Under the pieces are notes generated by a model. The model saw only the letters and a program-made list of their open reading frames with translations. It did not search any database and had not been told where the DNA came from. From NCBI RefSeq assembly GCF_002113885.1, contig NW_018403450.1, positions 1,347,405 to 1,411,404 of the forward strand: DNA of 64,000 nt, in the 5' to 3' direction. Below are positions 3,103-47,519 of the stretch, piece after piece; within the stretch, counting starts at the first letter, position 1, and each line of letters begins with the position of its first letter. Both the position numbers and the translations under genes were made by a program. Source of the stretch: Mizuhopecten yessoensis (Eukaryota).

Positions 3103-3214
3103 TATAAATACGGAAACAGGTTCAGATAAGGGTGTACTCTCAAGTTACCAGAATACGGGAAACTAACAAAAGGGCTGTTATTGAGGAACAGTTATAACTG
3201 GAACAAAACGCAAG
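3103..3214 (+). promoter_or_regulatory. TATA box and non-coding exon 1 of glycine-rich gene 1
   Basis: TATAAATA at 3103-3110, donor AAG|gtaaat after 3214, and a matching acceptor tcctttcag ending at 3589, just upstream of ATG 3611. Confidence 0.65.
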
Positions 3215-3610
3215 GTAAATGTGTATTTGTATCTGTTTAATACTTCTGAATAGATCAAGTATCATGTTAATTTTATATAAATGAAACCAGACATCAAATT
3301 GTATTGTGTAGGATCTAATGAACGTATGACTGAGTTTGCTTCATAAATAATACAGATTCGTTGTTATCACAAATACTTTTTGCATTAATTCAGAAAGGAT
3401 TCATTACAGTTATAGTACAATATCTTAGACTGCCTGTTTGTTTTCCTCATTTTCCTGTAATTAAGCTTTAAGATCAGAATCTGTATACATGACTTTAATA
3501 AGATTTCTTTGCACAATAATGTAAATATATTATTCTATCGAACGTTTCTGTGACAATTTACATTTACATGTGTACCGCCATCCTTTCAGAGTACCAAAAC
3601 CACAGCAGAT

Positions 3611-6600
3611 ATGAAGACTTCGCTGATAATTTTGACCGCTTTGTTGGCTGTCACCTTTGGAAATGATCATTTCGGTAAGAATTTATATGAATATTTTTTT
3701 AGATATCAAGGTAAACAATCGCGCATGTTCCGTCTTACTCTAAGAAAATTCATCAAAATCAAAATTCCTGAAAAAAAGACGTACCTTTTAAAAATCATCT
3801 TTTTATATTTTCTCCCGTGTGCAACTGTTCCTAGTTGTGTTCCGGAAAAAAATGTTTAGAATAAGTAACAATTACGCCTGATATTTCTGGAAGCCGAACA
3901 TTCTGGAGTATATTTGTAACATGTATACATTCATACGAGCAAAATACTGCCAAACATTGTTATCATAGACTTGTACACAACGAATATCTCGTCATTTTGA
4001 TTTTTTTATCATTGATTTGAAATTACACGGAAAATAATTAAAGTATTACCTATGTTAATGCCACGACACGTTTGTAATATGCGACGGTAAATACAATTTC
4101 TTGAATCTTAAATCTTGAAACATTGTGAAAGGTGATTCAACTATGGCTTGATATCATTATAAACGGTGCTACACAGACGCAGGTATAAACCTGTTTTTTT
4201 TACATAACGTTTCACTTGTAGACGACAATGGTTTCATTGACGGTGGTCAAATTATCGGTGGAATCGGGGGCATCAGCGATGGCATCGACCATTTCGGCAT
4301 GAACGGTATCGACGATTTTGGTAATGGTGGTTTCATTGGAGGCGGTATAGGTGGACATGGGGGTGGAATAGGTCACGGGGGCATCGGAGGGAGCATTGGC
4401 GGAGGACGAATTATCGGAGGGGGGATAGCAGGAGTCGGAGGAATTAGGGGTATTGGGGTTGGTCATGACGATCTGGGTGGCATGGGAGGTTTCGATGACA
4501 TGGGTTTTGATAATGGACGCGGGGTTGGTATAATTGGAGGCGGAATCCGGGGTATTGGGGGTGGACACGGGGGTGGTATAATTGGAGGAGGAATCGGGGG
4601 TATTGGGGGTGGACATGGGGGTAGTATGATTGGAGGAGGAATCGGGGGTATTGGGGGTGGACATGGGGGTGGTATGATTGGAGGAGGAATCGGGGGTATT
4701 GGGGGTGGACATGGAGGTGGTATAATTGGAGGAGGAATCGGGGGTATTGGTAGTGGACATGGGGGTGGTATAATTGGAGGAGGAATCGGGGGTATTGGAG
4801 GTGGACATGGGGGTGGTATTATTGGAGGAGGAATCGGGGGTATTGGGGGAAGGCATGGGGGTGGTATAATCGGAAGAGGAATCGGGGGTATTGGGGGTAG
4901 ACATGGGGGTGGTGTTATTGGGAGTGGGATGCTCGGCGTCGGTGGCATTCGTGGAGGTATAGGACAGATGGGACCGTACTACGGAGGCTACGGCAGGACA
5001 GGCGGCGTCATGGGAGGAAGTAAGTACTTCGTCTCACCTTATATTATTGTAAAACATATGTGTACATTGTAATATTTGAATTCGAAAAGAGTTGAAGGTG
5101 TCTGAATGTAATTTGCTTGAGATGAAAACTTAATAATTCGAACTGGTACATAAGATGTTTCGGAGTATCAAACTTAATCAATCCAGTGCTTATTTCGATA
5201 ATAATGGGAAGAAAACGAAAAGACTACATTAATGTTGAAAACTTCAGGTATGCTGGCGTCTCCAACTTATTTTGCTTTTGTTATTTTAGTTAATACCAAT
5301 ACCGGAAGGGGCGGAGTAATTGGCGGAGGGGTACGCGGGTTTGGAGTTGGACGAATAAATGGCGGTTTTGATGATATGAGCAAAGGTTACAGCAAAGGGT
5401 ACAGCAAGGGATACAGCAAAGGGAACGGACCTGTAATTAGACAACGTGTTCTTCCCCGAGTTCAGCCAAGGATCCAGTATCAACCACAAATCCGCATGCC
5501 CTCCTACAATAGAGGTAGGGTTTTCTGTATTACTCTGTTTTACTATTGTGTTCGTCAAATTCAGGATCACACTCTTTCTAAAAAAATCTGCCTTTTCAAT
5601 AAATAAAACAATTAAACTGATTTATACTAATTGAAAATATATTAGAAAACATGCATTAGTTAAAGTAATGTTTTGATCCAAAGTGGAAAGTCTAACTAAA
5701 ACAACCGCACTAATACGGTGTAGGATAGCGTATAACTTAAATACCCAATGACTAGGAATAAGAAAGATAATTTTATTTCCCGTTCTAAGATAGATATTTG
5801 ATTTACAAAACCGCTTTGAGTGTAGATATTCAACTAATATGATGTTTTCCTATACTATTTGTTTTTCATAAAAGTGCATTATTGCATAATGTATATATAT
5901 GTAGGTGATGTATTTATTGATGTTCGAACATTTGTTGGCCCTTATGACCGTTGTAATAATAATACTAATAGTAGTATTCATTGATAAAATACTTGACAAT
6001 ATATTAACATTATTTACCTAAAACAAAAAGTCAGGAAAAATACTTTTGCAGAAATTTTTAATATATAATCGCTACCTTTCTTAAAATGTAAATGCAGCCT
6101 TACTAATTAAACACATTATCTATTCTCCTATACTTATCGTACTGTCCTCCTCTTTACGAACAGGAATCGCTGGAATGGGAAGAATGCCATACACCAAGGG
6201 AGTTCCATATCAGTCCCGCTCTCTAGGGATCGGTGGTTTCCGTCGCCCCTCGAAGGGAATGGGAGGAATCGGGATGGGAAGTTTGGGGGTCCCGATGTAT
6301 CCCCAGAGGACCATGACAAGGGGCAGCCTCAGTTTCGGAGCGAACAGACCTAGTTCCAAAGGCTATTCAAAGGGCTACTATTCCAAGGGGTACTCCAAGG
6401 GTGAGGCTTTTATCTTTATATTTTTAATTTGATTTCATTTCATTTTAAAAAATATACGGAGCGTGAAAATATCGCATGGAATCAAACATAAATGTTACAG
6501 CGAATGCTGCAGAATGGATATAATGCGAATGCATTGCTAGTTATTATCCCATTGAATTGATATTTACACAAAAAAATATTCGCCAAAAAGAATGACGGTT

Positions 6601-7907
6601 CATTTTTGTTTGTAATCCTATTGCTTTGTTCTGTTTATGATGTGATTGATAACTGTGGTCCACATTTCATTCCATTGACAACTGTGGTCCACAGTTCATT
6701 CCATTGATAACTGTGGTCTACAGTTCATTCCATTGATAACTGTGGTCCACAGTTCATCCCATTGACAACTGTGGTCCACAGTTCATTCCAGTGATAACTG
6801 TGGTCCTCATTTCATTCCATTGATAACTGTGGTCCACAGCTTATTCCATTGATAACTGTGGTCCACAGCTTATTCCATTGATAACTGTGGTCCACAGCTT
6901 ATTCCATTGATAACTGTGGTCCACACCTCATTCCATTGATAACTGTGGTCCACAGCTTATTCCATTGATAACTGTGGTCCACAGTTCATCCCATTGATAA
7001 CTGTGGTCCACAGTTCATCCCATTGATAACTGTGGTCCACAGTTCATCCCATTGATAACTGTGGTCCACAGTTCATCCCATTGATAACTGTGGTCCACAG
7101 TTCATCCCATTGACCACTGTGGTCCACAGTTCATTCCAGTGAGAACTGTGGTCCACATTTCATTCCATTGACTACTGTGGTCCATAGTTCATTCCATTGA
7201 TAACTGTGGTTCACATTTCATTCCATTGATACCTGTGGTCCACATTTCATCCCATTGGTGACTGTGTCCCCAGTTCATCCCAGTGATGACTGTGGTCCAC
7301 ATTTCATTCCATTGATAACTGTGGTCCACAGCTCATTCCATTGATAACTGTGGTCCACAGTTCATTCCAGTGATAACTTTGGTCCACAGTTCATTCCAGT
7401 GATGACTGACTGTGGTCCACATTTTATCCTATTGGTAACTGTGGTCCACAGTTCATTCCATTGATAACTGTGGTCCACGTTTCGTCAGTGTTTCAGTGTT
7501 TGATTCAACATGTTTGCATCATATCAAAAAGCAAAATTCTACAACAGCGCGCAGTCGTTCAATAACTTACAAATGTATGCCTCTGTGTAGTTAGTTACAT
7601 GTGCGATAACCACAAAACTGAATTTTAAATAAAGCTACGGTTTAGAGTTTTATAATTTAATGCGTGTCACCTTATTAATCTGCCTACAAAGTCACCGGTT
7701 ATAAACTGCGCTGGATAGTGAAAGTTATAATAGAAAAAGACGGGTAATATATATTTATATCCAAATGTGGTCTACATGTTCCGTTTTTGTAATATGTAAT
7801 ATGTGATATGTAAAATGTATATGACAAAACCGATCAAACCAAATCTGTAAGGTCTTTGGACAAGCATCAATCTCTGTCTCTCTTCTGATACAGGTAGAAG
7901 CTATTAG
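3611..7907 (+). CDS. Secreted Gly/Ile/His-rich repeat protein, gene 1 (445 aa; putative shell/periostracum or other extracellular structural protein)
   Basis: join(3611-3674,4222-5019,5290-5514,6164-6400,7894-7907). All introns are GT-AG and phase 1, the frame is continuous, and the total is 1338 nt. Signal peptide MKTSLIILTALLAVTFG, acidic DD-rich N-terminal part, about 8 x GGGHGGGIIGGGIGGI, then a basic tail with YSKG repeats ending GRSY*. AATAAA at 8417-8422. Confidence 0.88.
6645..7478. repeat. 29-bp tandem repeat (~29 copies) in the last intron of gene 1
   Basis: Unit ttcattccattgataactgtggtccacag, with an internal palindrome aactgtgg-t-ccacagtt. Confidence 0.95.
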
Positions 7908-10900
7908 ACATGGTTGACGATGTCCCGCCTCAGGCGGAGCAGACGACAGGAGCAGACGACATCCAGTGTCATGGTGACAATGGCGTATATTTCCATTATG
8001 ACTGGTCACTTCAGGTGATCAGGAGTTCAACGGACAGGACCTAGGTGTTGGATTAACGACACTTTGATTTATGGCTTACCGACACAAATGGGAAATCGTG
8101 GCTGTAAATAAGTTTCTGGAGCACAACTACACGAAACTGTGGCTATATTTACACCGATACTAGACAATACATATAGCAGGATTATCTTATACGAATTATG
8201 ATGTCAGAGGAATTATACGTAAACATTAATTTTGTATGAAAAGCTATGTCTGGAAAATGAATGCATTATTTCTTGTATTTACATTATTATTCAATTTTTA
8301 AGATATATATGGCAATTTTAATCACATAAACACTATTTTTATCAATATACTTTGTTTGTTATTAACAATGTACTCCACCCATATGTATATAAACATTGAT
8401 ATGTATGCATCTTATTAATAAAGGTTAATTGCATTTTATGTATATGAGTGTCTTTTATGTCACTTCACTTGCTACCAAGAAAGAGATTACTGAAATGTTT
8501 TAGTAGACATAACAAGGAACCTGATTGACTCACTGCATGTAGCACTCACGTGATCATCTTCGAAAATTGTTACTGATTAATTATTTTGCACGAAGCTAGA
8601 AAGAAAATTGGTATACTTGAAAAACTTACTCGTTCTTCATTCAAATAAATATTTAGGTTCTTTCCCCTTTATGGAATTCTGAACTGTTTGTTTGAATCAA
8701 GTCTTTCCTCGTATTTGTCCACATAAAACATGGATGGAATTTGCTACACAACGGACGGCCTCTAATGCTGTGTAAAACTCAACTTTATATATTGATGCTG
8801 GCAAAAAGTATCGGTGAATCTCTTATTTCTTATAAAATATGAACATTCTAAATTCTTCTACAAAAAACGCACAGACCTTTCATCACATTTTATTAAAATT
8901 GATGTTTCTATAAGCACAGAGAATAACAAGTATTAACTTATTCCGCGATAAGGTTAAGAAATGCTTTAATGTTCATGTGAATATTAATCCTCAGTAATTG
9001 CGTGAAGTGTCACAACAAATCCGTTTTTCATCAACAACAGGACTTCCTCAAGCCATTTGCTCAGAACGAAAACAACTCTCATTAAGGGGGACATTTTAAA
9101 TGACAACATCGTCTGTTTATCAAAGCGTTCTGCTGCCAAAATGACACGTTGGAATCCTTCTTTGGTGCTAGACCGAAGTGAGTATGAAAATGAAATGATA
9201 AAATAAGATGGAAAGTGGAGTTTGAACGTTGTTAGCGGTAAGACAGGTTGAAATTAAAACAAGGGACAGTAAACACATTCACATAAGTGAATACTCTTAT
9301 AAAAATGCAATGTCTTAGATCGTTTACTAATCAGTTGGTCTTTGTTAATCTTTCTTTAGTTCCTACTTTGCCTCGATGCCATCGCGGTCTGACCATGGGT
9401 TTGTTGTACTAAACATCTTATAGGTAGACATTCATTGACAACTAAACAAAAAGCATTTATCGGACATTTTACACCTGGGATCTAGCTCATGATCTTCAAA
9501 TCAGTTTATATCAATTAGCTTAAAAAAAATCTCTGCTTACTTCAGAAAATAATAACTAAAGTCTAGTGGCAGAATTCTGCAATACACATCACCGTGATAC
9601 ACATATGAAGCGGAGTAACTCTAGTCAAAAGTATATTAGTTCTGGCTTTCCTATAGCACAGCACTATTTTTCTCTGTAGATCAGAAAAATATTACTGTCT
9701 ATTTCTTGAGATGGAATGACACCTCACATGTCCTCCCTTGCCATGGAAATTGCGTCGAAAGCTGAAAAGTGTGCAGTTACTGTGTTAAGTAGCATGTAAA
9801 TGATCGGTGTAGTGAAAACGATAAATCACTCATGCCTGATGCTGACAGAGATATTACCTTGTCTACTTCACAGCGAGCAGACATAGTCTATTAACCTTAT
9901 AACTCTTTCTGTAAGATAGACTCATCCCAAATGATACTCCGGTCATTTGAGGTGGAAGAAATGGCTCTTTCCCATGGTATGACACGAGGGGCGGTTTGCG
10001 CATCCATTTACATTACTTGTTGATAAGTTTTTCCGCCGAGTTACATCATGTTATAAACATGTGATGCCTTGTTCATAATCAGAATGTTACTAACATGTTC
10101 TACGAACACTTCTTAAAATAAGTTTACAGTGTAAATTGTAATTGACTCTATAACATATATTGGCCTAGTATTGCTGCCCCCTGATTTCGCACGCATACAA
10201 TTTAGTGATAGGTCAAAGGAATGCTAACAATGTTTCGCAGAAACTCGTTTAAATTACGAAATTCGTTATGATATCAATAACATATGGAAAAAATGGTTTT
10301 TGTTCTTGCTATGATATCAAATACGTTGAAGTTGAACGCTGTTCTAGGAATGTAGTTTTATTCGGCCAAACAAATACGCTGTTTGCATATACAAAGTAAC
10401 TAATTATATCAGGTTTCACATTCTGTTTTCTTTCGTTTATTGATATATAGCTACATTTGAACTTCGGTAAATTTGACCTAATTGCCGTCGCCGATTAATC
10501 AGTACACCAATCGCTGCATTACATTTTGCACTAAAAATGTTACTGTATTAACTCTTGAAGTGCTCAATAACAACACAGTATTATGTCACGCCACATATCA
10601 CCATCCATTGAGACGTGATACTAATTAACGACGAACATTCAGAAACAAATACCATGTGTTAATCATTGGTATCAAATCACGCTTAAAAGCCTTCATACTT
10701 TCCATCTTGTTAGCCTTTCTTTGAAAACGATTATTTTCTTTTATTGAGAACAGATATCAAGGGGTTTAAAAATAAAGAAATATATATATAATGCGATAGC
10801 TGCATTCTGCTATTTGTAAGCATATTAGTAAGTGTCTCTTCCATTCATTGAATTTACAGTTTGTCCTACATCAAACAACTGTGGCACTTCGTGCAAATAC

Positions 10901-13694: not shown

Positions 13695-14808
13695 GTATGT
13701 ACTACTAATCTTGTACCGTTACTTACACATTATCATAGGGACGATATTATCTCTTTTTAGGTTTATGTTTTAACTCTAGTGTTAGATATCTAACACTAAA
13801 ACAGCATTTGTAGACTGTCTATATTGGACTCCACTGAATGCTATATACCATTGACTATATGTAATTGGGAAATGAGTGACTGGATTTTTTATCAAATTGG
13901 TTTTACTAATGCTAGTTACATATATATATTTATTTTTTTAAGAGAAAAAAAATAGTTTGAGCAATTTGTTACAAAATGAAGACATCGCTAGCGCGAGGAG
14001 GATTAGCATGATAAAGAACAGTTAGACAGTTAGGAGCTTGGAACATCTTTCTTCCACATTTGTGTATGATATTGTCGTGTGACTGAGATCGTCAGGTTCA
14101 GGCTGCGTCAGAATTTGTTTAAGTTGGCAAAATATTTTTTTTTACTTTGTTAGAACCGTGAGACTTTATTAAAGCATTAAACTTGAAAGTTATTGAACTG
14201 ATTTATTGTACTATATGAATTTGGCGTTTTTTATTTTGATCAATTATGTTTGGTACTACATCACAAATGTTCGCAAATTCAATGCAGAAGAACAAAGTCG
14301 AAGGAGGCTCATATTCAAACGGTTACGATTAACATTTGAATCCATCAGAATATAGGAAAGTGTTAATCAATCACCATGTTATTGGTCTTATTATTATCGC
14401 GGTAATTAATGGATAGATCTGGAAGTTAACAAATAGTAGCCACTATGGTAAACATGTGTTTAAACATACGCATGTTTCTGTTCATGTAAATAATTTTGGT
14501 GGATATCTCAATTTCTCGACACACGTTATAAGCGATCGCCCTACTTTTGTGACAAAAGTATATTGTAATCTAAAAGACATACACAGGAATTGAGGATATC
14601 CTTACATGCAATGCTCTGTGTAGAGCTGTTTTTTTCTAAACTATTTGTACCGGTATTCTTTTGATAATCAAGTCCAAAAAACCATATGTGGCTGATATTG
14701 CATGTGTTATTATGATGTTAGAGCTTAGTTACACATAAGACATGTGAGTTACAATGTACGTGATGAATTATCATGACACTTTGTCTTTGTTTTCACAGAT
14801 AGATCAGC

Positions 14809-17277
14809 ATGTTTGCCCTTGCTATCCTTGCCTCCCTTGCTTCCGTAACCCTAGCCAACTTTTATGGTAAGTTTATTTAAAATAGTGCATTATCGTATTC
14901 AAATCAGTCAATCGCAGTCAACAACGATACCTAGATCTTTTGAAAGCGAATGAACCCATTGTGATTTTATTTTATCAAAATACTGCGCTGGATTGATTGA
15001 TATTATTTCAATGAACATTTTATAATGATATTTTCTACAAATAAATATCTCTGTTAGCTTTGCTTGACAATATGTTGCGATATACCTAGCAAACCCTTAT
15101 ACATTGAAATTTAAAATTTTATGATATCATGTCTTATTTTAGGCCATTATCCGATGGGGGGCTTCGTCGGTCATAGAATGCATCACGGATATCCCAAAGG
15201 CGGATTTAAGATTGGTGGCGGGTATGGTGGATACAGGAAGGGAGGATACCACAAGGTGATGCACCGTCCAGTGATCGGAGGGTACCCCAAGGGAGGCCAC
15301 ATGGTAGCTATACCAATCATCAAGGGAGGTTACAAAAAGGGGGGACACATCGGAGGATACCCAAAAGGAGGATTCATCGGAGGAAAGGGTGGTATTCTTG
15401 GTGGATACCCTAAGGGTGGAATCATCGGGGGAAAGGGTGGTATTCTTGGTGGATACCCTAAGGGAGGAATCATCGGAGGTCATGGCGGTATGATTGGTGG
15501 ATATCCTAATGGTGGAATCATCGGAGGTCATGGCGGTATGATTGGTGGATACCACAAGGGTGGAATCATTGGAGGTCATGGCGGTATGATTGGCGGATAC
15601 CCCAAGGGTGGAATCATCGGAGGACATGGCAGTATGAGTGGTGGATTTATCGGAGGCAATGTCGGTGGACACATTGGAGGACATATTGCCGGCGGAAGTA
15701 TTGGAGCTGGACATATCGGAGGCAGCTCTGTTGGAGGCGGTTTCAGAGCTACTATCGGTGATGACTTTGGAGTTGTGTCGTCTAATGGAGGAGGAGCGTT
15801 CGTTGGAGACGAGTTTGCAGGCATTTCTGGAAATGGATTCAACGCTATTGCCAGTGACGATTTTGAAGCCATTAACTCCAACGGCGGATCCGGAGCTCTT
15901 ATTGGTGATGATTTTGGAGTTACTTTTGGAGGTAACGGTGGAGCTATCGTAGGCGATGATACAGGCATTGCTTTCGGAGGAAACGGAGGTGCCATTATCA
16001 ACGACGATTTTGGAATTGCTTTTGGAGGAAATGGAGGCGCTATTGCTGATGATGACTTCGGAGTTTCGTTTGGAAATGGAATTGGAGTAGGAGGCGGAAA
16101 CGGAATCAATAATGGAGGCGGATTAGGAGGATTTGTCGGTAGAGCGAGTCACGGATTAGGATCTAATGTTGGACTATCCAGTGGTTTTGTAGGAGGACAC
16201 GGAGGAATCAGTAAGTATGATACCATGAAGATGATAATAGTATTAGCGTTTTTAATGTACAAACATACCATGGAATTACCATTGTAATTATTGCTGTATC
16301 CAGATATTGTTATTGTTATTTTGTACATTTACTTAAATATTGCAACTCCACAGTTTCTCCAAAATAACAATATTTACATCATACACTGTTCTAATAGCAT
16401 CTCTGTATGTTACTATACAAGAGGATCCGTCTCTATCGTTTTTACAATTGTTCCATTTGAAATTTCACAACTTATATAGGATTGATGGTTATGTTCCATT
16501 TTCATTTTGCAGTGCACAAAGGAGGATTTGGAGGCATTCAGAAGAGTGGCTTCATTGGAGGTAATTGTGTATTATGATTATATGTTTACCGTAAACAATA
16601 ATATTATTCATTCATTGTTCACTATTTATAACTTTTCATGTTTTCAGTATATAATCTTGGTCATATCATTATGTATTACTTGCCACTGACGGCATGAGAA
16701 AAGCTAGTAAATTTAATCATATGTACAATAACGAGCCTGCACCCATTATACCTAAATGTTTTATTAATGCCATCACCAAAGTATAATGTTATAAATGAGG
16801 ATTCGATGACTTTAATCAGCTTTGACACATTGTTCAAATTTAATTTCGAATCTAAAAGGACGCCAACAGATATTTTAATGTTTTTTGGTATTGTTGTTTT
16901 GCAGGACATGGAGGATTTGGAGGTTTTAAGAAAGGAAACCTAATCGGAGGTGATTGTTTATTTTAATTATACTTACCAGATGTAAAACATGCTATTGCTA
17001 GTTTAATGAAGTAATGTCCCGTAGCTGAAGCTCTTACATCTACAAAGTGTCGATTGATACACGTATGTGTTGTATACTTAGATATTAAGGTCTAAATGTA
17101 AGCGTCTTTCGTTTATTCCTACTCTCATTCATTTAGAGTTTGAATTGAGGCCTAGTTCACACTTCAATGACCCTGTGTATTTTCTTATTCTATTTGTTTT
17201 CCATGAATTATATTATAAACATTATGCTTAAAAATATTTTAACGTCATTTTGTTTTCCTTTTACAGGTGGATATTAA
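14809..17277 (+). CDS. Secreted Gly-rich basic/acidic block protein, copy A (409 aa)
   Basis: join(14809-14866,15143-16210,16513-16560,16905-16949,17267-17277). All introns are GT-AG and phase 1; 1230 nt. Signal peptide MFALAILASLASVTLA, 6 x GGYPKGGIIGG(K/H)GG(I/M)(L/I), 7 x DD-containing ~16-mers, ending GGY*. AATAAA 17629-17634. Confidence 0.9.
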
Positions 17278-17873
17278 TTCAAGCCAATCCAATTGCATTA
17301 GTCCCGTGCAAAGATGTAAAGGGGAGGGGGCCACGTATGATCACGTGATTATACAAACTTTGTCACATAAATACTGCGGTACCGGCGCCGCTTCTGACAA
17401 GTATTCATATATTTGTTCATGTTCCAGTTTCATGAACGGTTCTTATCTAGTGAGAATTCCTTGACCTTAGCTTTTACCATTGGGAAGTGTTGCTGAACTT
17501 TTAGGGAAAATCTGCAGTCAAGGAAACTTTTTTATTCTAAACAATGATTTACCACGGCAAATCTTAAGTTAATACGTTTCCTTTGGATAAGTAATATTCG
17601 TGAAACTGGGATTAGTTAAGTTATTTGAAATAAAATATTGTTGGTTATTTTATACATGTGTTCTCTGTTCTCTTCACGGTATGTTCAAATGTTTTGACTG
17701 ACAGTGACGATTAAGCATCCATTTAAATGGATACATCATATATGGTGATTTATTAAGACTGGTATCATTAATAATTTACACAACAAGTTATGACTACTAT
17801 ATCATAGTTAGTTGAATAACTTGATTTAAAAAACAGATATCGAGTCAAAGGATAAAAATATATAAAAAAAAAA

Positions 17874-27579: not shown

Positions 27580-27581
27580 AT

Positions 27582-28594: not shown

Positions 28595-29539
28595 TGAATG
28601 ATATATACCATTGACTATATATAATGGGGAAATGGGTTTTGCTAATGCTAGTTATATATATATAGTATTTAAGAGAGAAAAATAATAGTTTGAGCAATCT
28701 GTTAGTTTCAAATTGAAGACATCACTAGCGCGAGTAAGATAAGCATGATAAACAACAGTTAAGAATTTAGAACACCTTTCTGCCACATTTGTATATGATA
28801 TTGTCGTGTGATTGAGATTGTGAGGTTCAGGCTGCGTCAGAATTTGTTTAAGTTGGCCAAATAGTTTATTGATTTGTGAGAATCGTCAGACTACATTATA
28901 GCATTACACCTGAAAGTTTTTGAACTGATTTATTGTACTACATGAATTTGGCGGTTTTTTATTTTGATCAATTATGTTTGGAACTAAATCACAAATGTTC
29001 GCAAATTGAATGCAGAAGAACAAAGTCGAAGGAGGCTCATATTCAAACGGTTACCATTAACATTTGAATCCATCAGAATATCGGAAAATGTTAATCAATC
29101 ACCATGTTATCGGTCTTATTAGACTACCTCCGCGGCAGTTAATGGATAGATCTTGAAGTTAACAAATAGTAGCCACTATGGTAAAAATGTGTTTAAACAT
29201 ACACATGTTTCTGTTCATGTAAATCATTTTGGCGGATATCTCATTTTCTCGACACACGTTATAAGCGATCGCCCTACGTTTGTATTAAAATATATTGTAA
29301 TCTAAAAGACATACACAGGAATTGAGGATATCCTTACATGCAATGCTCTGTGTAGAGTTGTTTTTTTCTAAACTACTTGACCGGTATTCTTTTGATAATC
29401 AAGTCCAAGTAACCATCTGTGGCTGATATCGCATGTTTTATTATGATGTTAGAGCTTAGTTACTCATAAAATATGTGATTTATAATGTACGTGATGAATT
29501 ATCATGACACTGTGTCTTTGTTTTCACAGATAGATCAGC

Positions 29540-32003
29540 ATGTTTGCCCTTGCTATCCTTGCCTCCCTTGCTACCGTAACCCTAGCCAACTTTTATGGTG
29601 AGTTTATTTAACATAGTGCATTACAGTATTCAAATTATTCAATCGCAGTCAACAACGATATCTAGATCTTTTGAAAGCGAATGAACCCATTGTGCTGGTA
29701 GGCGAGGGTGTGAATCCCAGTTGAACAACTAGTTTCGGTCATTAAGACAAGATGTCCATCAATTGTACAATACACCCAAGTCTTTGTTTTATCAAAATAC
29801 TGCGCTGGTTTGATTGATATTATTTCAATGAATATTTTATAGTGATATTTTCTACAAATAAATCTCTCTGTTAGCTTTTTGCTTGACAATATGTTGCGAT
29901 ACACCTAGCACAGTCTGTATACAATGAAATTAAAAATTTTATGATATCATGTCTTGTTTTAGGCCATTATCCGATGGGTGGCTTCGTCGGCCATAGAATG
30001 CATTACGGATATCCCAAAGGCGGATTTATGATTGGTGGCGGGTATGGTGGATACAGGAAGGGAGGATACCACAAGGTGATGCACCGTCCAGTGATCGGAG
30101 GGTACCCCAAGGGAGGCCACATGGTAGCTATACCAATCATCAAGGGAGGTTACAAAAAGGGGGGACACATCGGAGGATACCCAAAAGGTGGATTTATCGG
30201 AGGAAAGGGCGGTTTTCTCGGTGGATACCCTAAGGGTGGAATCATCGGAGGTCATGGCGGTATGATTGGTGGATACCCTAAGGGGGGAATCATAGGAGGA
30301 AATGGTGGTATTCTTGGTGGATACCCAAAAGGTGGATTCATCGGAGGAAAGGGTGGTATTTTCGGTGGATACCCTAAGGGAGGAATCATCGGAGGACATG
30401 GCGGTATGATTGGTGGATATCCTAATGGTGGAATCATCGGAGGACATGGCGGTATGAGTGGTGGATTTATCGGAGGCAATGTTGGAGGACACATTGGAGG
30501 ACATATTGCCGGCGGAAGTAATGGAGCTGGACATATCGGAGGCAGTTCTGTTGGAGGGGGTTTCCGAGCTACTATCGGTGATGACTTTGGAGTTGTGTCG
30601 TCTAATGGAGGACGAGTTGTCGTTGGAGGCGATTTAGAAGGCATTTCTGGAAATGGATTGAACGTTATTTCCAGTGACGATGATTTTACAGCCATTAACT
30701 TCAACGGCGGATCCGGAGCTATTATAGGTGATGATTTTGGAGTTACTTTTGGAAGTAATGGTGGAGCTATCGTAGGCGACGATACAAGCATTGCTTTCGG
30801 AGGAAACGGAGGTGCCATTGTCAACGACGATTTTGGAATTGCTTTTGGAGGAAATGGAGGCGCTATTGCTGGTGATGACTTCGGAGTTTCGTTTGGAAAT
30901 GGAATTGGAGCAGGAAATGGAAACGGAAACGGAATCAATATTGGAGGTGGAGTAGGAGGATTTAGCGGTGGAGTGAGTCACGGATTAGGATCTAATGTTG
31001 GACTATCCAGTGGTTTTGTAGGAGGACACGGAGGCATCAGTAAGTATGATACTATCAAGATGATAAAAGTATTAGCATTTTTAATATACAAAAATACCAT
31101 AGAATTACCATTGTAATTATTGCTGTATCCAGATATTGTTATTGTTATCTTTTACATTTACTTAAATGTTGCAACTCCACAGTTTCCTCAAAATTACAAT
31201 ATTTACATCATACACTGTTCTAATAGCATCTCTGTCTTTTACTATACAAGAGGATCCGTCTCTCTCGTTTTTACAATTGTTCCATTTGGAATTTCACAAC
31301 TTATATAGGATTGATGGTTATGTCCCATTTTCATTTTGCAGTGCACAAAGGAGGATTTGGAGGCATTCAGAAGAGTGGCTTCATTGGAGGTAATTGTGTA
31401 TTATAATTATATGTTTACCGTAAACAATAATATTATTCATTCATTGTTCACTATTTATAACTTTTCATGTCTTGGTCATATCATTATGTATTACTTGCTA
31501 CTGACGGCATGAGAGAAGCTAGTAAATGTAACCATCTGTACAATAAAGCTTTGAGCCATTGTTCAAATTAGATGTCACAATTAAAAGGACGCTAACACAT
31601 ATTTTCATGTTTTTCGCTATTGATCTTTTGCAGGACATGGAGGATTTGGAGGTTTAAAGAAAGGAAACCTAATCGGAGGTGATTGTTTATTTTAATTATA
31701 CTTACCAGATGTAAAACATGCTAATGCTAGTTTAATGAAGTAATGTCCCGTAGCTGAAGCTCTTACATCTACAAAGTGTCGATTGATACACGTATGGTCT
31801 ACATGTAAACATCGTTCATTTGTTCCTACTTTCAATCATTTAGAGTTTGAATTTAGGTCTTGTTTACTCTTCAATAACCCTGTGTATTTTCTTATTCTAT
31901 TTGTTTTTCCCTGAATTATATCATAAACATTATGCTTTAAAATATTGATGAAATTTAACAAAACCTTATGTCACTTTTGTTTCCTTTTACAGGTGGATAT
32001 TAA
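29540..32003 (+). CDS. Secreted Gly-rich basic/acidic block protein, copy B (412 aa)
   Basis: join(29540-29597,29963-31039,31342-31389,31634-31678,31993-32003). All introns are GT-AG and phase 1; 1239 nt; ends GGY*. AATAAA 32344-32349. Confidence 0.9.
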
Positions 32004-33059
32004 GTCAAGCAAATCCAATTGCATTAGTCCCGTGCAAAGATGTAAAGGGGAGGGGGCTCTCCAGCCACGTATGATCACGTGATTATACTAACCTTGTCAC
32101 ACCGGCGCCGCAGTTGTGACAAGTATATTTGTTGAGGTTCCAGTTTCATGAATGGTTCTTATATAATGAGAATTCATTGTCCTTAGTTTTTACCATTGGA
32201 AAGTGTTGCTGAACTTTTAGGGGGAATATGCAGTCAAGGAAACGTTTTATTCTAAATAATGATTTCCTACGGCAAACCTTAAGTTAATAAGTTTCCTTTG
32301 GATAAGTACCATTCGTGAAACTGGGATTAGTTAAGTTATTCGAAATAAAATATTGTTGGTAATTTTATACATGTTTTGTCGTTCTCTGTTCTCTTCACGG
32401 TACGTTAAAATGTTTTGACTGACAGTGACGATTTAGTATCCATTTCAATGGATACACCATATATGGTTATTTAATAAGACTGGTATCATTAATAACTTAC
32501 ACAACAAGTTATGACTATAGTTATGTGATGATGCTAAAGTGTAAACCCAAAAATAATGAATTTATCATTCAAATTGATCTGAGTTGAATAACTTGTTTTA
32601 AAAAACAGATATCGAGGCAAAGAATAAGAATATTTAAAAAAAAAATGTCAACAATAAATGCAATCAAACATTAAATGAAAGCGTTATCGTATCTGAGAGC
32701 AATAACACCAACAAATCAAAACTGCGTTCTCTCTCTGATTATTTCTATAATTGTTACGGGTTGATGTTGTTTTCAATGTCATAGTTTGCACCAATATTTC
32801 TGTAGACACGACTATGGTTACGTGATCGTGATAAAATAAAATTGAAATTCATGTTACTCGTTTGATTTATAAACAAGTGTACGAATAAATTCGATAACCC
32901 ACCCACTTCACTCGCAACAGACCAAATTAGGGGACACATTTTTTTCTAATTTATTTGTCAAGAATAACCATACAAATTCCTTTCATAGCCTCCTATATTA
33001 AATTGTAAGGGATTTTAAGACGACCTGTCTTTATCATTCAATGACACCAGATTCTACCG

Positions 33060-33916: not shown

Positions 33917-34199
33917 TATATCAAAACAGGAATTACTCAATATATACATCACGAGGTTCAAATATGTCTTGCTTCAGTTCCTTACCTTCAAACTTTTAAC
34001 TTTTGCCACACATTTTATTTTGCAATACAACTGTATTCATATCAGCTATACACGTCATTGCCCGATTTGTTTGATATCGCTGGCATATCCTTGAACATGT
34101 CTGTTTTATTTATTAAACAAGCATATTTATTCATCACACACAAATTGTTGAAAGATGAACATTTTACATAACAGGCTGAATTCATAAAGATGTTGTTTT

Positions 34200-39830: not shown

Positions 39831-39901
39831 GATGATATTGTTATTAATGTTTACATGTTGTTTCAAAAAATATTTGAATTATGATTAGCTCAAACCATGG
39901 A

Positions 39902-40125
39902 CGTATGTATGTATGTATGTATGTATGTATGTACGCATGCACCTATGTGTGTATGCATGCATGTGTGAGCGTGTGTGTGTAGGAGTGCATACATTAACGT
40001 ACGTGGGTGCATAACTATGCATGCAGCCATGCACAAGCATGTGCGCAAGTAAATATAATTTATGTATGTATGTAGGTGGGTAGGTATGTATTTACGTACG
40101 TATGTGTGTATATATGTATGTATGA
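39902..40125. repeat. (TATG)n and degenerate TG/TATG microsatellite
   Basis: gtatgtatgtatg run followed by degenerate units. Confidence 0.85.
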
Positions 40126-41233: not shown

Positions 41234-41416
41234 AGAACATCTAACATTACATTCATTGTCTTACCACGCACCTCTGTATGACGTAAACGTGTCACTTGAT
41301 TGTCTCGCCACTGTCCAGAGGGGTTGAGCAGTGAGAGGTTTGTCTGCTCTGCCCCTATATAAGACAGACACGGACACTGTTGGACATCATTCCCTGGCTG
41401 GACAACCCCTGAGGAG
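41234..41416 (+). promoter_or_regulatory. Core promoter and non-coding exon 1 of copy C
   Basis: TATATAA 41356-41362, TCATTC 41387-41392, donor after 41416. Confidence 0.75.
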
Positions 41417-41572
41417 GTATGTACTACTAATCTTGTACCGTTACTTACACATTAGCATAGGGACGATCTTCTCTCTTTTAGGTTTAGGTTTAAACTCTAG
41501 TGATAGATATCTAACACTAAAACTGCATTTGTAGACTGTCTATATTGGACTCCACTGAATGCTATATACCAT

Positions 41573-43296: not shown

Positions 43297-43922
43297 GTTA
43301 TTGAACTGATTTATTGTACTAAATGAATTTGGTGGTTTATTTTTTTATTTTGATCAATTATGTTTGGTACTACATCAGAAATGTTCGCAAATTCAATGCA
43401 GAAGAACAAAGTCGAAGGAGGCTCATATTCAAACGGTTACGATTTACATTTGAATTCATCAGAATATCGGAAAGTGTTAATCAATCACCATGTTATTGGT
43501 CTTATTATTATCGCGGTAGTTAATGGATAGATCTGGAAGTTAACAAATAGTAGCCACTATGGTAAGCATGTGTTTAAACATACGCATGTTTCTGTTCATG
43601 TAAATCATTTTGGCGGATATCTCATTTTCTCGACACACGTTATAAGCGATCGCCCTACTTTTGTGTCAAAAATATATTGTCATCTAAAAGATATACACAG
43701 TATTTGGGGATATCCTTACATGCAATGTTCTGTGTAGAGTTGTTTTTTCTCAAACTATTTGTACACGTATTCTTTTGATGATCAGGTCCAAAGAACCATC
43801 TATGGCTGATATTGCATGTGTTATTATGATGTTAGAGCTTAGTTACACATAAGACATGTGGGTTACAATGTACGTGATGAATTATCATGACACTTTGATT
43901 TTGTTTTCACAGATAGATCAGC

Positions 43923-46396
43923 ATGTTTGCCCTTGCTATCCTTGCCTCCCTTGCTACCGTAACCCTAGCCAACTTTCATGGTAAGTTTATTTAACATAGT
44001 GCATTACAGTATTCAAATCATTCAATCGCAGTCAACAATGATATCTAGATCTTTGGAAAGCGAATGAACCCATTGTGCTGGTAGGCGAGGCTGTTTAACA
44101 ACTAGTGTCGGTCATCAAGACAATATGTTCATAATTGTAAAATACACACAGGTCTTTGTTTTATCAAAATACTGCGCTGGTTTGATTGATATCATTTCAG
44201 TGAACATTTTATAGTGATATTTTCTACAAATAAATCTCTCTGTTAGCTTTGCTTGACAATATGTTGCGATATACCTACCAAAGTCTGTATAAATTGAAAT
44301 TTTATGATATCATGTCTTATTTTAGGCCATTATCCGATGGGTGGCTTCGTCGGCCATAGAATGCATTACGGATATCCCAAAGGCGGATTTATGATTGGTG
44401 GCGGGTATGGTGGATACAGGAAGGGAGGATACCACAAGGTGATGCACCGTCCAGTGATCGGAGGGTACCCCAAGGGAGGCCACATGGTAGCTATACCAAT
44501 CATCAAGGGAGGTTACAAAAAGGTGGGACACATCGGAGGATACCCAAAAGGTGGATTTATCGGAGGAAAGGGTGGTTTTCTCGGTGGATACCCTAAGGGT
44601 GGAATCATCGGAGGTCATGGCGGTATGATTGGTGGATACCCTAAGGGAGGAATCATAGGAGGAAAGGGTGGTATTCTTGGTGGATACCCTAAGGGTGGAA
44701 TCATCGGAGGAAAGGGTGGTATTCTTGGTGGATACCCAAAGGGAGGAATCATCGGAGGTCATGGCGGTATGATTGGTGGATATCCTAATGGTGGAATCAT
44801 CGGAGGACATGGCGGTATGAGTGGTGGATTTATCGGAGGCAATGTTGGAGGACACATTGGAGGACATATTGCCGGCGGAAGTAATGGAGCTGGACATATC
44901 GGAGGCAGTTCTGTTGGAGGTGGTTTCCGAGCTACTATCGGTGATGACTTTGGAGTTGTGTCGTCTAATGGAGGACGAGTTGTCGTTGGAGGCGATTTAG
45001 AAGGCATTTCTGGAAATGGATTGAACGTTATTTCCAGTGACGATGATTTTACAGCCATTCACTCCAACGGCGGATCCGGAGCTATTTTAGGTGATGATTT
45101 TGGAGTTACTTTTGGAAGTAATGGTGGAGCTATCGTAGGCGACGATACAAGCATTGCTTTCGGAAGAAACGGAGGTGCCATTGTCAACGACGATTTTGGA
45201 ATTGCTTTTGGAGGAAATGGAGGCGCTATTGCTGGCGATGACTTCGGAGTTTCGTTTGGAAATGGAATTGGAGTAGGTAGCGGCAACGGAATCAATAATG
45301 GAGGCAGATTTGGAGGATTTGTCGGTAGAGCGAGTCACGGATTAGGATCTATTGTTGGACTATCCAGTAGTTTTGTAGGAGGACACGGAGGCATCAGTAA
45401 GTATGATACCATCAAGATGATAATAGTATTAGCGTTTTTAATGTACAAAAATACCATAGAATTACCATTGTAATTATTGCTGTATCCAGATATTGTTATT
45501 GTTATTTTTTACATTTACCTAAATGTTGCAACTCCACAGTTTCCCCAAAATTACAATATTTACATCATACTCTCTGTATGTTACTATACAAGAGGATCCG
45601 TCTCTCTCAATTTTAAAATTGTTTCATTGAAAAGTCACAACTTATATAGGATTGATGGTTATGTTGCATTGTCATTTTGCAGTGCACAAAGGACGATTTG
45701 GAGGCATTATGAAGGGTATATTTTTCATGTTATGGAAAAAAAACGGAGTGTACTCTCATCATAAACCGTTTCGCGGTTTTTTTAGAGTACACTCCGTTTT
45801 TTGTGTTATATCTCCATAACATGAAAAATATATTCAAGTTAATCCGTCAATAATCTTGGTCATATCATTATTTATTATTTAACACTGACGGCATGAGAGA
45901 AGCTAGTAAATTTAATTTGTCTGTAAAATAAAGCTATGACCCATTGTTCAAATTAGATGTCACAATTAAGAGGACGCTAATACATATTTTCATGTTTTTC
46001 GCTATTGTTGTTTTGCAGGACATGGAGGATTTGGAGGTTTAAAGAAAGGAAACCTTGTCGGAGGTGATTATTTATTCTAAGTATCCTTACCATATGTAAA
46101 ACATGATATTGCTAGTTTAATGAAATACTGTCCCGTAGCTGAAGCTCTTACATCTGTTGATTAATACACGTATGTGTTGTATACTTAGACATTAAGGTCT
46201 AAATGTAAACATCTTTCATTTGTTCCTACTTTCAATCATTTAGAGTTTGAATTTAGGCCTTGTTCACACTTCAATAACCCTGTGTATTTTCTTATTCTAT
46301 TAGTTTTCCCTGAATTCTTTTATAACCATTATGCTTTAAAATATTGATATTGATATCTTAACGTCACTTTTATTTCCTTTTACAGGTGGATATTAA
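43923..46396 (+). CDS. Secreted Gly-rich basic/acidic block protein, copy C (~405 aa; exon 4 shortened)
   Basis: join(43923-43980,44326-45396,45683-45715,46019-46063,46386-46396). The exon-4 donor G|gtatat is inferred; skipping the exon also keeps frame. Ends GGY*. AATAAA 46726-46731. Confidence 0.85.
45717..45848. mobile_element. Small palindromic MITE-like sequence at the exon 4/intron 4 boundary of copy C
   Basis: tatatttttcatgttatgga...aaaaaacggagtgtactct pairs with agagtacactccgtttttt...tccataacatgaaaaatata. Absent from copies A and B. Confidence 0.7.
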
Positions 46397-47519
46397 TTCA
46401 AGCCAATCCAGTTGAATTAGTCCCGTGCAAATATGTAAAGGTGAGAGGGCTGTCCAGCCACGTATGATCACGTGATTATACAAACCTTGCCGCAGTTGTG
46501 ACAAGTATATTTGTTGAGGTTTCAGTTTCATGAATGGTTCTTATATAATGAGAATTCCTTTACCTTATTTTTTACCATTTGAAAGTGTTGCGGAACTTTT
46601 AGGGAAAATCTGCAGTCAAGGAAACTTTTTATTCTAAATAATGATTTCCTACGGCAAACCTTAGGTTAATAAGTTTCTTTTGGATAAGTAACATTCGTGA
46701 AACTGGGATCAGCTAAGTTATTCGAAATAAATATTGTTGGTAATTTTATACATGTTTTGTCGTTCTCTGTTCTCTCACGGTAAGTTAACATGTTTTGACT
46801 GACAGTGACGATTTAGTATCTATTTAAATGGACACACCATATATGGTGATTTATTAAGACTGGTATCATTAATAATTTACACAACAAGTTATGACTGTTA
46901 TATCATAGTTTGTGATGATGCCAAAGTTTTAACACAAAAATAATAAATTTATCATTCAAATCGATCAGAGTTGAATAACATGTTTTATAAAACAGATATC
47001 GAGTCAAAGGATAAAAATGTTTCAAAAAGAAAATGTCAATAGCAAATGCAATCAAATAATAAATGAAAGCGTTATCGTATCTGAGAGCAAAATCCTTTAA
47101 GGCCACCAGATAATGCACCACTGAATATCAAATTCTTTTAACCTGTTTGATTTCACAATAACACCAACAAATCAAAACTGCGTTCTCTCTCTCAGTGGTT
47201 ATTTCTATAATTGTTACGGGTTGATGTTGTTTTCAATGTCATAGTTTGCACCAATATTTCTGTAGATATGACTATTGTTACGTGATCGTGATAAAATAAA
47301 AATGAAATTCATGTTACTCGTTTGATTTATAAACAAATGTACGAATAAATTCGATAACCCACCCACTTCACTCGCAACAGACCAAATTAGGGACACATTT
47401 TCTTCTAATTTATACGTCAAAACTAACCATAAAAAAGTCCTTTCATAGCCCCCTATGTTAAATTGTAAGGAATTTTGAAGACGACCTGTGTTTACTTTCA
47501 ATGAAACCAGATTCTACCG

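What the first reader, a model, noticed from the sequence alone, without database searches (positions are those of the whole stretch)
3103..46731. Four-gene family of secreted, Cys-free glycine-rich block-copolymer proteins sharing one six-exon, all-phase-1 architecture
Seen: gene 1 and copies A-C are very different in sequence but have the same layout. Each has a TATA box, non-coding exon 1, a 58-64 nt signal exon, a large repeat exon, two symmetric exons, and an 11-14 nt last coding exon ending in Tyr. They share the motifs GGHGG(G)(M/I)IGG, DDFG and Y-x-K-G, and contain no Cys or Trp. Known: molluscan shematrins and abductin are secreted Gly-rich proteins with a C-terminal Tyr, and Tyr/Lys pairs are DOPA-quinone cross-linking sites in mussel foot proteins. 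These repeats match neither family as I remember them. Inference: a lineage-specific structural protein family for a tanned extracellular material (periostracum, shell matrix, ligament or byssus).
Basis: partly seen in the sequence, partly recalled or inferred. Interest (0 to 1): 0.8.

Follow-up and report, generated by a model that had tools for sequence, protein, structure and literature searches.

The report
Tandem secreted glycine-rich structural protein genes
Four intact neighbouring genes in what is probably a scallop genome encode secreted, cysteine-free, glycine/isoleucine-rich repeat proteins of the well-known "silk-like / shematrin-like" class that bivalves use to build shell, ligament or byssus, so this is a solid but fairly ordinary find whose tissue and exact role remain untested.

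Summary
Gene 1 (3.6-7.9 kb) and three ~92-97% identical tandem copies A-C (14.8-17.3, 29.5-32.0, 43.9-46.4 kb) each have five coding exons with GT-AG introns. All introns are phase 1. Each gene has a 58-64 nt signal-peptide exon, one large repeat exon, two symmetric exons and an 11-14 nt last coding exon ending in Tyr. The proteins (405-445 aa) have no Cys or Trp, 36-40% Gly and 10-14% Ile. They carry blocks of opposite charge built on a shared 16-residue repeat.

Third-position excess and dN/dS of 0.4-0.5 among A-C support coding on the + strand.

Not confirmed: the non-coding exon 1 and TATA box of A-C (only a conserved TTATAAG), and sequence homology between gene 1 and A-C, which is no better than composition shuffles. 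The "family of four" rests on architecture, adjacency and repeat period.

The proteins meet the published definition of silk-like structural proteins and fail every abductin feature. Shematrin membership could not be tested. Database blanks say little, because a control shows the protein collections lack this species. An MSP130-type gene lies next door.

Best reading: mantle-secreted, cross-linkable framework proteins. This is a new member of a known kind. The scan noted the 16-residue register and the MSP130 neighbour before, on this same window.

The parts
3103..3110 (+). Gene 1 TATA box (TATAAATA)
   Evidence: Regex scan; sequence read. Function as a promoter is inferred.
3133..3215 (+). 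Gene 1 putative non-coding exon 1. The 5' end is approximate; the donor is AAG|GTAAAT at 3216.
   Evidence: Sequence. There is no RNA evidence. It is inferred from the TATA box, the donor and the acceptor in front of exon 2.
3590..3674 (+). Gene 1 exon 2: 21 nt of leader plus 64 nt coding the signal peptide MKTSLIILTALLAVTFGNDHF; ends in phase 1
   Evidence: Hydropathy maximum 2.78 over 11 residues.
4222..5019 (+). Gene 1 exon 3 (798 nt, phase 1-1): acidic N-terminal block, then 8.5 copies of the 48-nt repeat coding GGHGGGIIGGGIGGIG (4514-4921)
5290..5514 (+). Gene 1 exon 4 (225 nt, phase 1-1): basic block with KGYSKGYSKGYSKG
6164..6400 (+). Gene 1 exon 5 (237 nt, phase 1-1): basic Arg/Lys/Tyr/Pro block ending KGYSKGYYSKGYSK
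7894..8422 (+). Gene 1 last exon: 14 coding nt (G-RSY-stop, 7894-7907), then 3' UTR to the AATAAA at 8417-8422
14799..14866 (+). Copy A exon 2: 10 nt of leader plus 58 nt coding the signal peptide MFALAILASLASVTLANFY; ends in phase 1
15143..16210 (+). Copy A exon 3 (1068 nt, phase 1-1), in order: a basic block of Tyr/Lys/His GGYPKGGIIGGHGGMI repeats (48-nt period, 15355-15646), a His/Gly/Ile block, an acidic DDFG block in a 16-residue register, and a neutral Gly-rich end
16513..16560 (+). Copy A exon 4 (48 nt, one 16-residue unit: M-HKGGFGGIQKSGFIG)
16905..16949 (+). Copy A exon 5 (45 nt: G-HGGFGGFKKGNLIG)
17267..17634 (+). Copy A last exon: 11 coding nt (G-GY-stop, 17267-17277), then 3' UTR to the AATAAA at 17629-17634
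29530..32349 (+). Copy B gene body. Coding exons 29540-29597, 29963-31039, 31342-31389, 31634-31678, 31993-32003; AATAAA at 32344.
   Evidence: Exon 3 is 92% identical in nucleotides to A and 97% to C.
43913..46731 (+). Copy C gene body. Coding exons 43923-43980, 44326-45396, 45683-45715 (shortened, GTATAT donor), 46019-46063, 46386-46396; AATAAA at 46726-46731.
14525..14531 (+). TATA-like TTATAAG, conserved upstream of A, B and C (coordinate given for A)
   Evidence: Alignment of the three upstream regions. Promoter function is not shown.

Best explanation
The window holds four intact, same-strand genes: gene 1 plus three recent tandem duplicates on a unit of about 14.5 kb. They encode secreted, Cys/Trp-free, Gly/Ile-rich repetitive low-complexity proteins. 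These belong to the 'silk-like structural protein' class, which also includes the pearl-oyster shematrins.

Most likely mechanism (inferred, not shown):
1. An epithelium that builds extracellular material secretes the proteins. The mantle is the first candidate, making shell framework or periostracum.
2. The uncharged Gly/Ile/His repeats, with their 16-residue period, give a flexible or beta-rich insoluble scaffold.
3. The oppositely charged blocks drive electrostatic self-assembly or coacervation, and the Asp pairs bind Ca2+ or carbonate mineral. The block order is acidic, His, basic in gene 1. In A-C it is basic, His, acidic, then a basic tail.
4. His residues allow pH- or metal-dependent assembly.
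5. The Tyr-x-Lys-Gly motifs and the C-terminal Tyr serve as sites of oxidative (tyrosinase/DOPA-quinone) cross-linking.

Shown: gene structure, secretion signal, composition, block and repeat organisation, and duplication with constraint.
Inferred: tissue, assembly and cross-linking.
For: - Gene models: canonical splice sites, uniform phase 1, signal peptides, stops and AATAAA signals in all four genes.
- Coding constraint among A-C: dN/dS 0.39-0.50 and an excess of third-position differences. B-C exon 3 is 97.0% identical against 89.7-93.6% for their four introns other than intron 4 (75.2%).
- Composition and charge blocks.
- A 48-nt (16-residue) repeat in both gene types.
- All three criteria of the SLSP class of PMC4944945 are met: signal peptide, no TM-like segment, and at least 25% Gly in 80 residues (observed maxima 0.50-0.66).
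- Tandem clustering is typical of shematrin and other shell-matrix genes (PMC4759782).
- The next gene downstream on the same strand carries the choice-of-anchor I domain. From my own knowledge of the families, this is the domain of MSP130 biomineralisation proteins.
- Genome size (987.6 Mb, 82,659 contigs) fits a pectinid assembly. Published scallop assemblies range from 724 to 988 Mb (PMC12121003). From memory it matches the Yesso scallop assembly.
Against: - No transcript, tissue or proteomic evidence could be reached.
- No homologue was found anywhere, so function rests on composition and analogy.
- Gene 1 and A-C show no significant sequence similarity.
- The structure prediction is of low confidence (mean pLDDT 44) with no fold match.
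- A neighbouring MSP130-type gene is weak evidence for shared function.
- Copy C has a shortened exon 4 with a weak donor and may be partly degenerate.
- Byssus, ligament or other secretions fit the composition almost as well as shell does.
Confidence: 0.55

Rival explanations
1. The proteins are components of the hinge ligament (resilium). They would act as elastomers alongside abductin, with the Gly/Ile/Met repeats serving as entropic springs and Tyr/Lys as cross-links.
For: - The genome is probably a scallop's, and scallops have a large protein-rubber resilium.
- Gly-plus-hydrophobic repeats with terminal Tyr and a few Lys resemble the design of abductin (PMC9999432).
- There is no Cys in the mature protein.
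Against: - Every abductin feature tested fails: length 405-445 aa against 136 aa, a 16-residue rather than a 10-residue repeat, no repeated GGFGGMGGG, Met 2.4-3.8% and Gly 36-40% against about 58-60% Gly with high Met.
- Strongly acidic DDFG blocks and a neighbouring MSP130-type gene point to mineral contact rather than rubber.
Confidence: 0.12
2. The proteins are byssal or foot-gland proteins (thread matrix or adhesive) of the juvenile scallop. His-rich Gly blocks would give metal-coordination cross-links, and Tyr/Lys would give DOPA chemistry.
For: - GGHGG-type His/Gly repeats and Y-x-K-G motifs recall the His-rich and Gly-rich flanks of mussel preCols and DOPA/Lys adhesive proteins. This rests on general knowledge and the mention in PMC9999432.
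- The proteins meet the SLSP class definition, and that class includes byssal proteins.
Against: - There is no collagen, EGF, TIMP or other domain known from scallop byssal proteins (Pfam blank).
- Tyr is only 3.6-3.9%.
- Acidic DDFG arrays are not typical of byssal proteins.
- The genomic neighbour is of a biomineralisation type.
Confidence: 0.12
3. Gene 1 and A-C are not one family. They would be two unrelated low-complexity secreted genes that lie side by side and resemble each other by convergence: phase-1 exons are common in secreted proteins and Gly-rich repeats arise easily.
For: - Smith-Waterman scores between them do not exceed composition-matched shuffles (z = 1.6; acidic blocks z = -1.0).
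- Reciprocal genome searches do not connect them.
- Exons 4 and 5 differ fivefold in length (225/237 against 48/45 nt).
- The order of the charge blocks is inverted.
Against: - Both have the same number of coding exons, and every intron is phase 1.
- Both have the same odd terminal micro-exon coding Gly-(x)-Tyr-stop.
- Both have the same 48-nt repeat period with a shared G-H-G-G...I..G..G-G-I..G skeleton; I count 10 of 16 positions by eye from the consensus units.
- Both have DDFG motifs and lack Cys and Trp.
- They lie about 7 kb apart on the same strand.
Confidence: 0.3
4. The real products are read from the minus strand, where Pro-rich or Ser/Thr-rich (mucin-like) open frames overlap the repeat exons. 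Alternatively, the loci are non-functional repeat DNA that happens to be open.
For: - Long minus-strand ORFs exist over every repeat exon (for example 4212-4904, 15139-15714 and 15576-16109).
- One of these frames shares its wobble positions with the + frame, so the codon-position test cannot exclude it.
Against: - The minus-strand ORFs have no signal peptide, and no set of splice sites or polyadenylation signals was looked for or seen on that strand.
- The + strand has all of these, in register, in four genes.
- The frame stays open through about 1.07 kb in three paralogues with dN/dS below 1.
Confidence: 0.03

Closest known systems
Shematrins (Pinctada; glycine-rich shell framework proteins) and 'shematrin-like' proteins of other bivalves, including the published Chlamys farreri shematrin
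   Same: - Secreted, Gly-rich and repetitive low-complexity, with hydrophobic residues spacing the Gly runs, and ending in Tyr.
- Genes in tandem clusters that evolve fast by repeat gain and loss (PMC4759782; PMC4897951).
- 'Shematrin-like' proteins of other genera cannot be aligned to Pinctada shematrins either and are grouped by features alone (PMC9210306).
   Different: - The repeats here are 16-residue GGHGGGIIGGGIGGIG and GGYPKGGIIGGHGGMI units, not G(n)Y arrays.
- They are rich in Ile and His.
- They carry a long acidic DDFG block.
- The C-terminus is GRSY or GGY rather than the strongly basic ...KKY type that I recall for shematrins.
Abductin (scallop hinge-ligament rubber protein)
   Same: A secreted scallop protein made of Gly runs broken by single hydrophobic residues, with few Lys and terminal Tyr proposed as cross-link sites (PMC9999432).
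   Different: Abductin is 136 aa with decapeptide GGFGGMGGGX repeats, about 58-60% Gly, high Met and two N-terminal Cys. The proteins here are 405-445 aa, have 16-residue repeats, 36-40% Gly, 2.4-3.8% Met, no Cys, and charged blocks.
Silk-like structural proteins (SLSPs) as defined by McDougall, Woodcroft and Degnan 2016 (PMC4944945)
   Same: All defining criteria are met: signal peptide, no transmembrane segment, and at least 25% Gly in an 80-residue window. The class is known to arise repeatedly and lineage-specifically.
   Different: SLSP is a functional and compositional class, not a homologous family, so membership says little about tissue or mechanism.
Mussel byssal preCol flanking domains and thread matrix proteins (natural block copolymers)
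   Same: A block-copolymer layout, His-rich Gly-rich segments, and Tyr/Lys available for DOPA-quinone chemistry. This comparison rests on general knowledge; PMC9999432 mentions it.
   Different: No collagen core and no matching repeats; the acidic DDFG arrays are absent from preCols; Pfam finds nothing.

Membership tests
Silk-like structural proteins (SLSP; PMC4944945) | N-terminal signal peptide | tested here: met
   The first coding exon of each gene is a 19-21 residue hydrophobic leader. The Kyte-Doolittle maximum over 11 residues is 2.45-2.78, with small residues before the likely cut (TFG / TLA). SignalP itself was not available.
Silk-like structural proteins (SLSP; PMC4944945) | No transmembrane domain | tested here: met
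   The highest 19-residue hydropathy in the mature parts examined (gene 1 exons 3-5 and copy A exon 3) is 1.13, in a Gly-interrupted segment. TMHMM was not available.
Silk-like structural proteins (SLSP; PMC4944945) | At least 25% Gly within an 80-residue window | tested here: met
   Maxima are 0.66 (gene 1) and 0.50-0.51 (A-C) in exon 3.
Shematrin family | Detectable sequence similarity to Pinctada or Chlamys shematrins | not testable with these tools
   No shematrin sequence could be obtained. Word-index and full HMMER searches returned nothing related. The control shows the collections lack this species. Published 'shematrin-like' proteins of other genera are also unalignable (PMC9210306).
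Shematrin family | Secreted Gly-rich repeats with hydrophobic spacers, and a C-terminal Tyr preceded by basic residues (feature list recalled from Yano et al. 2006, not read here) | tested here: inconclusive
   Gly-rich repeats with Ile/Met/Phe spacers and a terminal Tyr are present. The last residues are GRSY (gene 1) and GGY (A-C). Basic residues lie in the preceding exons rather than directly before the Tyr.
Shematrin family | Mantle-edge expression and presence in the calcitic shell layer | not testable with these tools
   No RNA-seq or proteome data were reachable.
Abductin | Short protein (136 aa precursor) made of GGFGGMGGGX decapeptide repeats | tested here: not met
   The proteins are 405-445 aa with a 48-nt (16-residue) repeat period, and no repeated GGFGGMGGG is visible in the translations. 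Definition taken from PMC9999432.
Abductin | About 58-60% Gly with unusually high Met; Ala-rich N-terminus with two Cys | tested here: not met
   Gly 36-40%, Met 2.4-3.8%, no Cys at all.

The most novel reading that the evidence does not exclude
Gene 1 and A-C may be the two partners of a purpose-built two-component material. All of their blocks (acidic DDFG, neutral His/Ile, basic Tyr/Lys) keep one 16-residue register, but the charge blocks run in opposite order in the two gene types. The proteins could then zip together in register into a beta-solenoid-like or polyglycine-II-like heteropolymer, which is afterwards locked by Tyr/Lys/His cross-links. That would make this a structural protein family of scallops unrelated to shematrin or abductin, with a sequence-encoded assembly code.
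Probability: 0.12. Interest if true: 0.6.

Novelty: new member of a known kind. Interest (0 to 1): 0.35.

Why it matters
If expression confirms it, the locus gives clean, complete gene models for a set of scallop extracellular-material proteins. It shows clear block-copolymer design and a simple evolutionary mechanism: 48-nt repeat units, single-repeat phase-1 exons and a 14.5 kb tandem duplication. This is useful for shell, ligament or byssus proteomics, where such Lys/Arg-poor low-complexity proteins are routinely missed. It is also useful for biomimetic polymer design. It does not open a new kind of biology, because lineage-specific, tandemly duplicated, secreted Gly-rich proteins are a well-described feature of bivalve genomes.

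Tried and rejected
1. Pfam on every large exon: no family.
2. Word-index protein search with exon 3 of A and with exon 3 of gene 1, the latter even at E <= 10: nothing.
3. Full HMMER scan of 1.84 billion representatives with exon 3 of A. There were 13 hits at E <= 1e-3. The seven whose sequences I read are unrelated low-complexity look-alikes, such as a Kazal-repeat protein with a GGIIGGYIGGYPSGG tail, a GPCR with a repeat insertion and insect-like GYG repeats. None reached E <= 1e-30.
4. Control for database coverage. A LINE reverse transcriptase from this window finds at best 59% identity and no molluscan names. The collections therefore do not hold this species, and the blanks cannot support novelty.
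5. ESM Atlas feature search: no usable hit.
6. AlphaFold2 on exon 3 of A with the three paralogues as alignment. Mean pLDDT was 44; there was only a weak regular strand pattern with a 16-residue period, at pLDDT 50-69. Foldseek against the PDB gave nothing (best E = 2.3, TM <= 0.13). The list of left-handed beta-helix, RTX lipase and polyproline-II antifreeze entries is not evidence.
7. Other Gly-rich hits in the same genome (C76725, C5516, C5564, C4526, C3643, C5102). Two are open-frame satellites and the other four show no open frame of 100 aa or more with over 20% Gly. None is a paralogue.
8. The 40 kb on each side of the window: no further family members.
9. Full-text search for six peptide motifs: no paper.
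10. McDougall 2013 and Lin 2014 could not be read.
11. Composition totals were summed exon by exon.
12. N stretches in the window (one N at 55865) and in the flanks were left as they are.
Full report
**What the window is**

The window is G000:C123:1347405-1411404 of a 987.6 Mb assembly in 82,659 contigs. It is AT-rich eukaryotic DNA with LINE-type reverse-transcriptase and endonuclease fragments and several satellites. The assembly size fits the upper end of published scallop assemblies, 724-988 Mb (PMC12121003). From memory it matches the Yesso scallop (Mizuhopecten/Patinopecten yessoensis) assembly. That identification is an inference and was not tested.

**Checking the observation: the gene models**

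Gene 1:
- It has a TATAAATA at 3103.
- A possible leader exon ends at a GTAAAT donor at 3216.
- An acceptor lies 21 nt ahead of the ATG at 3611.
- The coding exons are 3611-3674, 4222-5019, 5290-5514, 6164-6400 and 7894-7907.

Copies A, B and C:
- They lie on a repeat unit of about 14.5 kb that is 86-94% identical between copies.
- Their coding exons are 58, 1068-1077, 48 (33 in C), 45 and 11 nt long.

Features shared by all four genes:
- Every intron is GT-AG and every one is phase 1.
- Exon 3 and the two small exons are symmetric (multiples of three).
- The last coding exon contributes only G-RSY-stop (gene 1) or G-GY-stop (A-C).
- An AATAAA follows each stop within 350-510 nt.

Summed exon by exon, the products are 445, 409, 412 and 405 residues. 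They contain no Cys or Trp, 36-40% Gly and 10-14% Ile.

**Is it more than chance?**

- Open frames of 266-359 codons in DNA of 33-40% GC, kept in three paralogues with all splice sites intact, are not expected by chance.
- Differences between A and B or C fall 23:15:46 and 24:11:45 on codon positions 1:2:3.
- Nei-Gojobori dN/dS is 0.39-0.50, with dS of 0.05 (B-C) to 0.14-0.16 (A against B or C).
- For the B-C pair, exon 3 is 97.0% identical, more conserved than any of the four introns (75.2-93.6%).
- Long antisense ORFs exist over the repeats. They lack signal peptides, and I neither looked for nor saw the splice and polyadenylation framework that the + strand has.

**What is not confirmed**

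- In the 620 bp upstream block conserved among A, B and C there is no canonical TATA box. There is only a conserved TTATAAG (14525 in A) and several alternative donors. Their non-coding exon 1 is therefore a guess until RNA data are seen.
- Copy C is rearranged after 45708. Its exon 4 is 33 nt with a GTATAT donor.

**Anatomy of the proteins**

Tandem Repeats Finder gives a 48-nt period in both gene types:
- gene 1: 8.5 copies coding GGHGGGIIGGGIGGIG;
- A-C: about six copies coding GGYPKGGIIGG(H/K)GG(M/I)(I/L).

The acidic region of A-C is also in a 16-residue register (NGGAI-x-(G/N)DDFG-x-x-FGG). Exons 4 and 5 of A-C are each about one such unit.

The charge blocks are clear:
- Gene 1 runs from an acidic block (DDFG, DDL, FDDMGFD), to a neutral His/Gly/Ile block, to a strongly basic Arg/Lys/Tyr/Pro block containing KGYSKGYSKG.
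- A-C run from a basic Tyr/Lys/His block, to a His/Gly/Ile block, to an acidic block (net charge about -15), to a neutral block, to a short basic tail.

AlphaFold2 gives a low-confidence model (mean pLDDT 44). It shows a weak regular strand pattern of the same period, and no PDB fold match. I draw no structural conclusion from it.

**Are the four genes one family?**

A, B and C are plainly recent duplicates. Gene 1 is a different matter.
- Smith-Waterman scores against A are no better than composition-matched shuffles. The z-score is 1.6 overall, -1.0 for the acidic blocks and 2.7 for the His/Ile repeat block.
- Genome searches with either type do not retrieve the other at E <= 1e-3.
- The link therefore rests on five things: identical exon number and phase, the unusual terminal Tyr micro-exon, the shared repeat period and G-H-G-G...I skeleton, shared motifs, and adjacency on one strand.

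I rate common ancestry at about two in three.

No further members exist within 40 kb on either side. None was detected elsewhere in the genome. The weak genome hits I inspected are open-frame satellites or have no Gly-rich open frame.

**Surroundings**

The next gene downstream on the same strand starts with a signal-peptide exon at 61293-61520 and continues beyond the window. Two of its later exons match the choice-of-anchor I domain: NCBIfam E = 1.5e-10 and 2.1e-14, and Pfam PF22494 E = 1e-7. From established knowledge this is the domain of MSP130 biomineralisation proteins.

**Comparison with what is known**

- Pfam finds nothing in any exon.
- Two word-index searches and a full HMMER scan of 1.84 billion representatives gave nothing related; the seven hits whose sequences I read are low-complexity chance matches.
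- These blanks carry little weight. A LINE reverse transcriptase from this same window, which should have many near-identical copies in the species, finds at best 59% identity and no molluscan names. The collections therefore do not contain this species or its close relatives.
- The published definition of silk-like structural proteins is fully met: signal peptide, no TM segment, and at least 25% Gly in 80 residues (PMC4944945).
- Abductin, as described in PMC9999432, is excluded on length, repeat, composition and Cys content.
- Shematrins are the closest named family. They are Gly-rich, secreted, fast-evolving and arranged in tandem clusters (PMC4759782, PMC4897951). 'Shematrin-like' proteins of other genera are grouped by features alone because they cannot be aligned (PMC9210306).
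- A scallop shematrin has been cloned (Chlamys farreri, Lin et al. 2014, cited in PMC9210306). I could not read it or obtain its sequence, so membership and novelty remain open.

**How it most likely works**

- Shown: the genes are intact, and the proteins are secreted, repetitive and block-charged.
- Inferred: a secretory epithelium, most likely the mantle, exports them.
- Inferred: opposite-charge blocks and Gly/Ile repeats drive self-assembly into an insoluble framework.
- Inferred: Asp pairs contact Ca2+ or mineral, and His tunes assembly by pH or metal.
- Inferred: Tyr/Lys motifs and the terminal Tyr are oxidatively cross-linked.
- Ligament or byssus use is a live alternative.

**Verdict**

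The finding is real and well observed. It belongs to a well-known kind: lineage-specific, tandemly duplicated, secreted Gly-rich structural proteins of bivalves. Interest is moderate to low unless the in-register, inverted-block design proves to be an assembly code.

Noticed in passing
window 61293-61520 (+), continuing in L029:1118-1976 and L030:414-761 (G000:C123:1412522-1422165): The downstream neighbour on the same strand is an MSP130-type gene. It has a signal-peptide first exon, and two of its later exons match the choice-of-anchor I domain (NCBIfam NF038117 E = 1.5e-10 and 2.1e-14; Pfam PF22494 E = 1e-7). The first exon itself matches no family.
   Followed up: partly
window 6645-7478: A 29-bp satellite (ATTGATAACTGTGGTCCACAGTTCATTCC, about 29 copies, 89% matches) fills much of intron 5 of gene 1.
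   Followed up: no
window 17873-19804, 33065-33917, 47540-47728: A 16-bp satellite (ACATGACTTAACCAAC) lies just downstream of each of copies A, B and C. It is therefore part of the duplicated unit. Its length differs greatly between units: about 121, 53 and 12 copies.
   Followed up: no
window 51138-57640: A 6.5 kb array of a 56-bp satellite with higher-order periods of 168 and 250 bp and a strong negative GC skew. It lies between the Gly-rich cluster and the MSP130-type gene.
   Followed up: no
window 62602-63884: A 38-bp satellite (about 34 copies) lies just after the first exon of the MSP130-type gene, presumably in its first intron. A related Tyr/Ile-rich open-frame satellite fills L025:3537-6578, upstream of the window.
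   Followed up: no
window 23887-27675 (+), 36378-37732 (-), 39394-42088 (+), 694-2205 (-): LINE-type retroelement fragments sit between the gene copies. RVT_1 matches at 26260-26604 and 36653-37732 (E = 4e-16 and 1e-30). They account for most of the spacing and for the differences between the duplicated units.
   Followed up: partly
P0004: An unrelated 855-aa protein made of many Kazal-like Cys-rich repeats ends in a GGIIGGYIGGYPSGG repeat tail that is 74% identical to the GGYPKGGIIGG repeat over about 100 residues. This is probably convergence, but it shows the motif recurs attached to protease-inhibitor domains.
   Followed up: no
window 16513-16560 and 16905-16949 (and equivalents in B, C): Exons 4 and 5 of A-C are each about one 16-residue repeat unit (HKGGFGGIQKSGFIG and HGGFGGFKKGNLIG) bounded by phase-1 introns. 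They look like an exon duplication of a single repeat.
   Followed up: no
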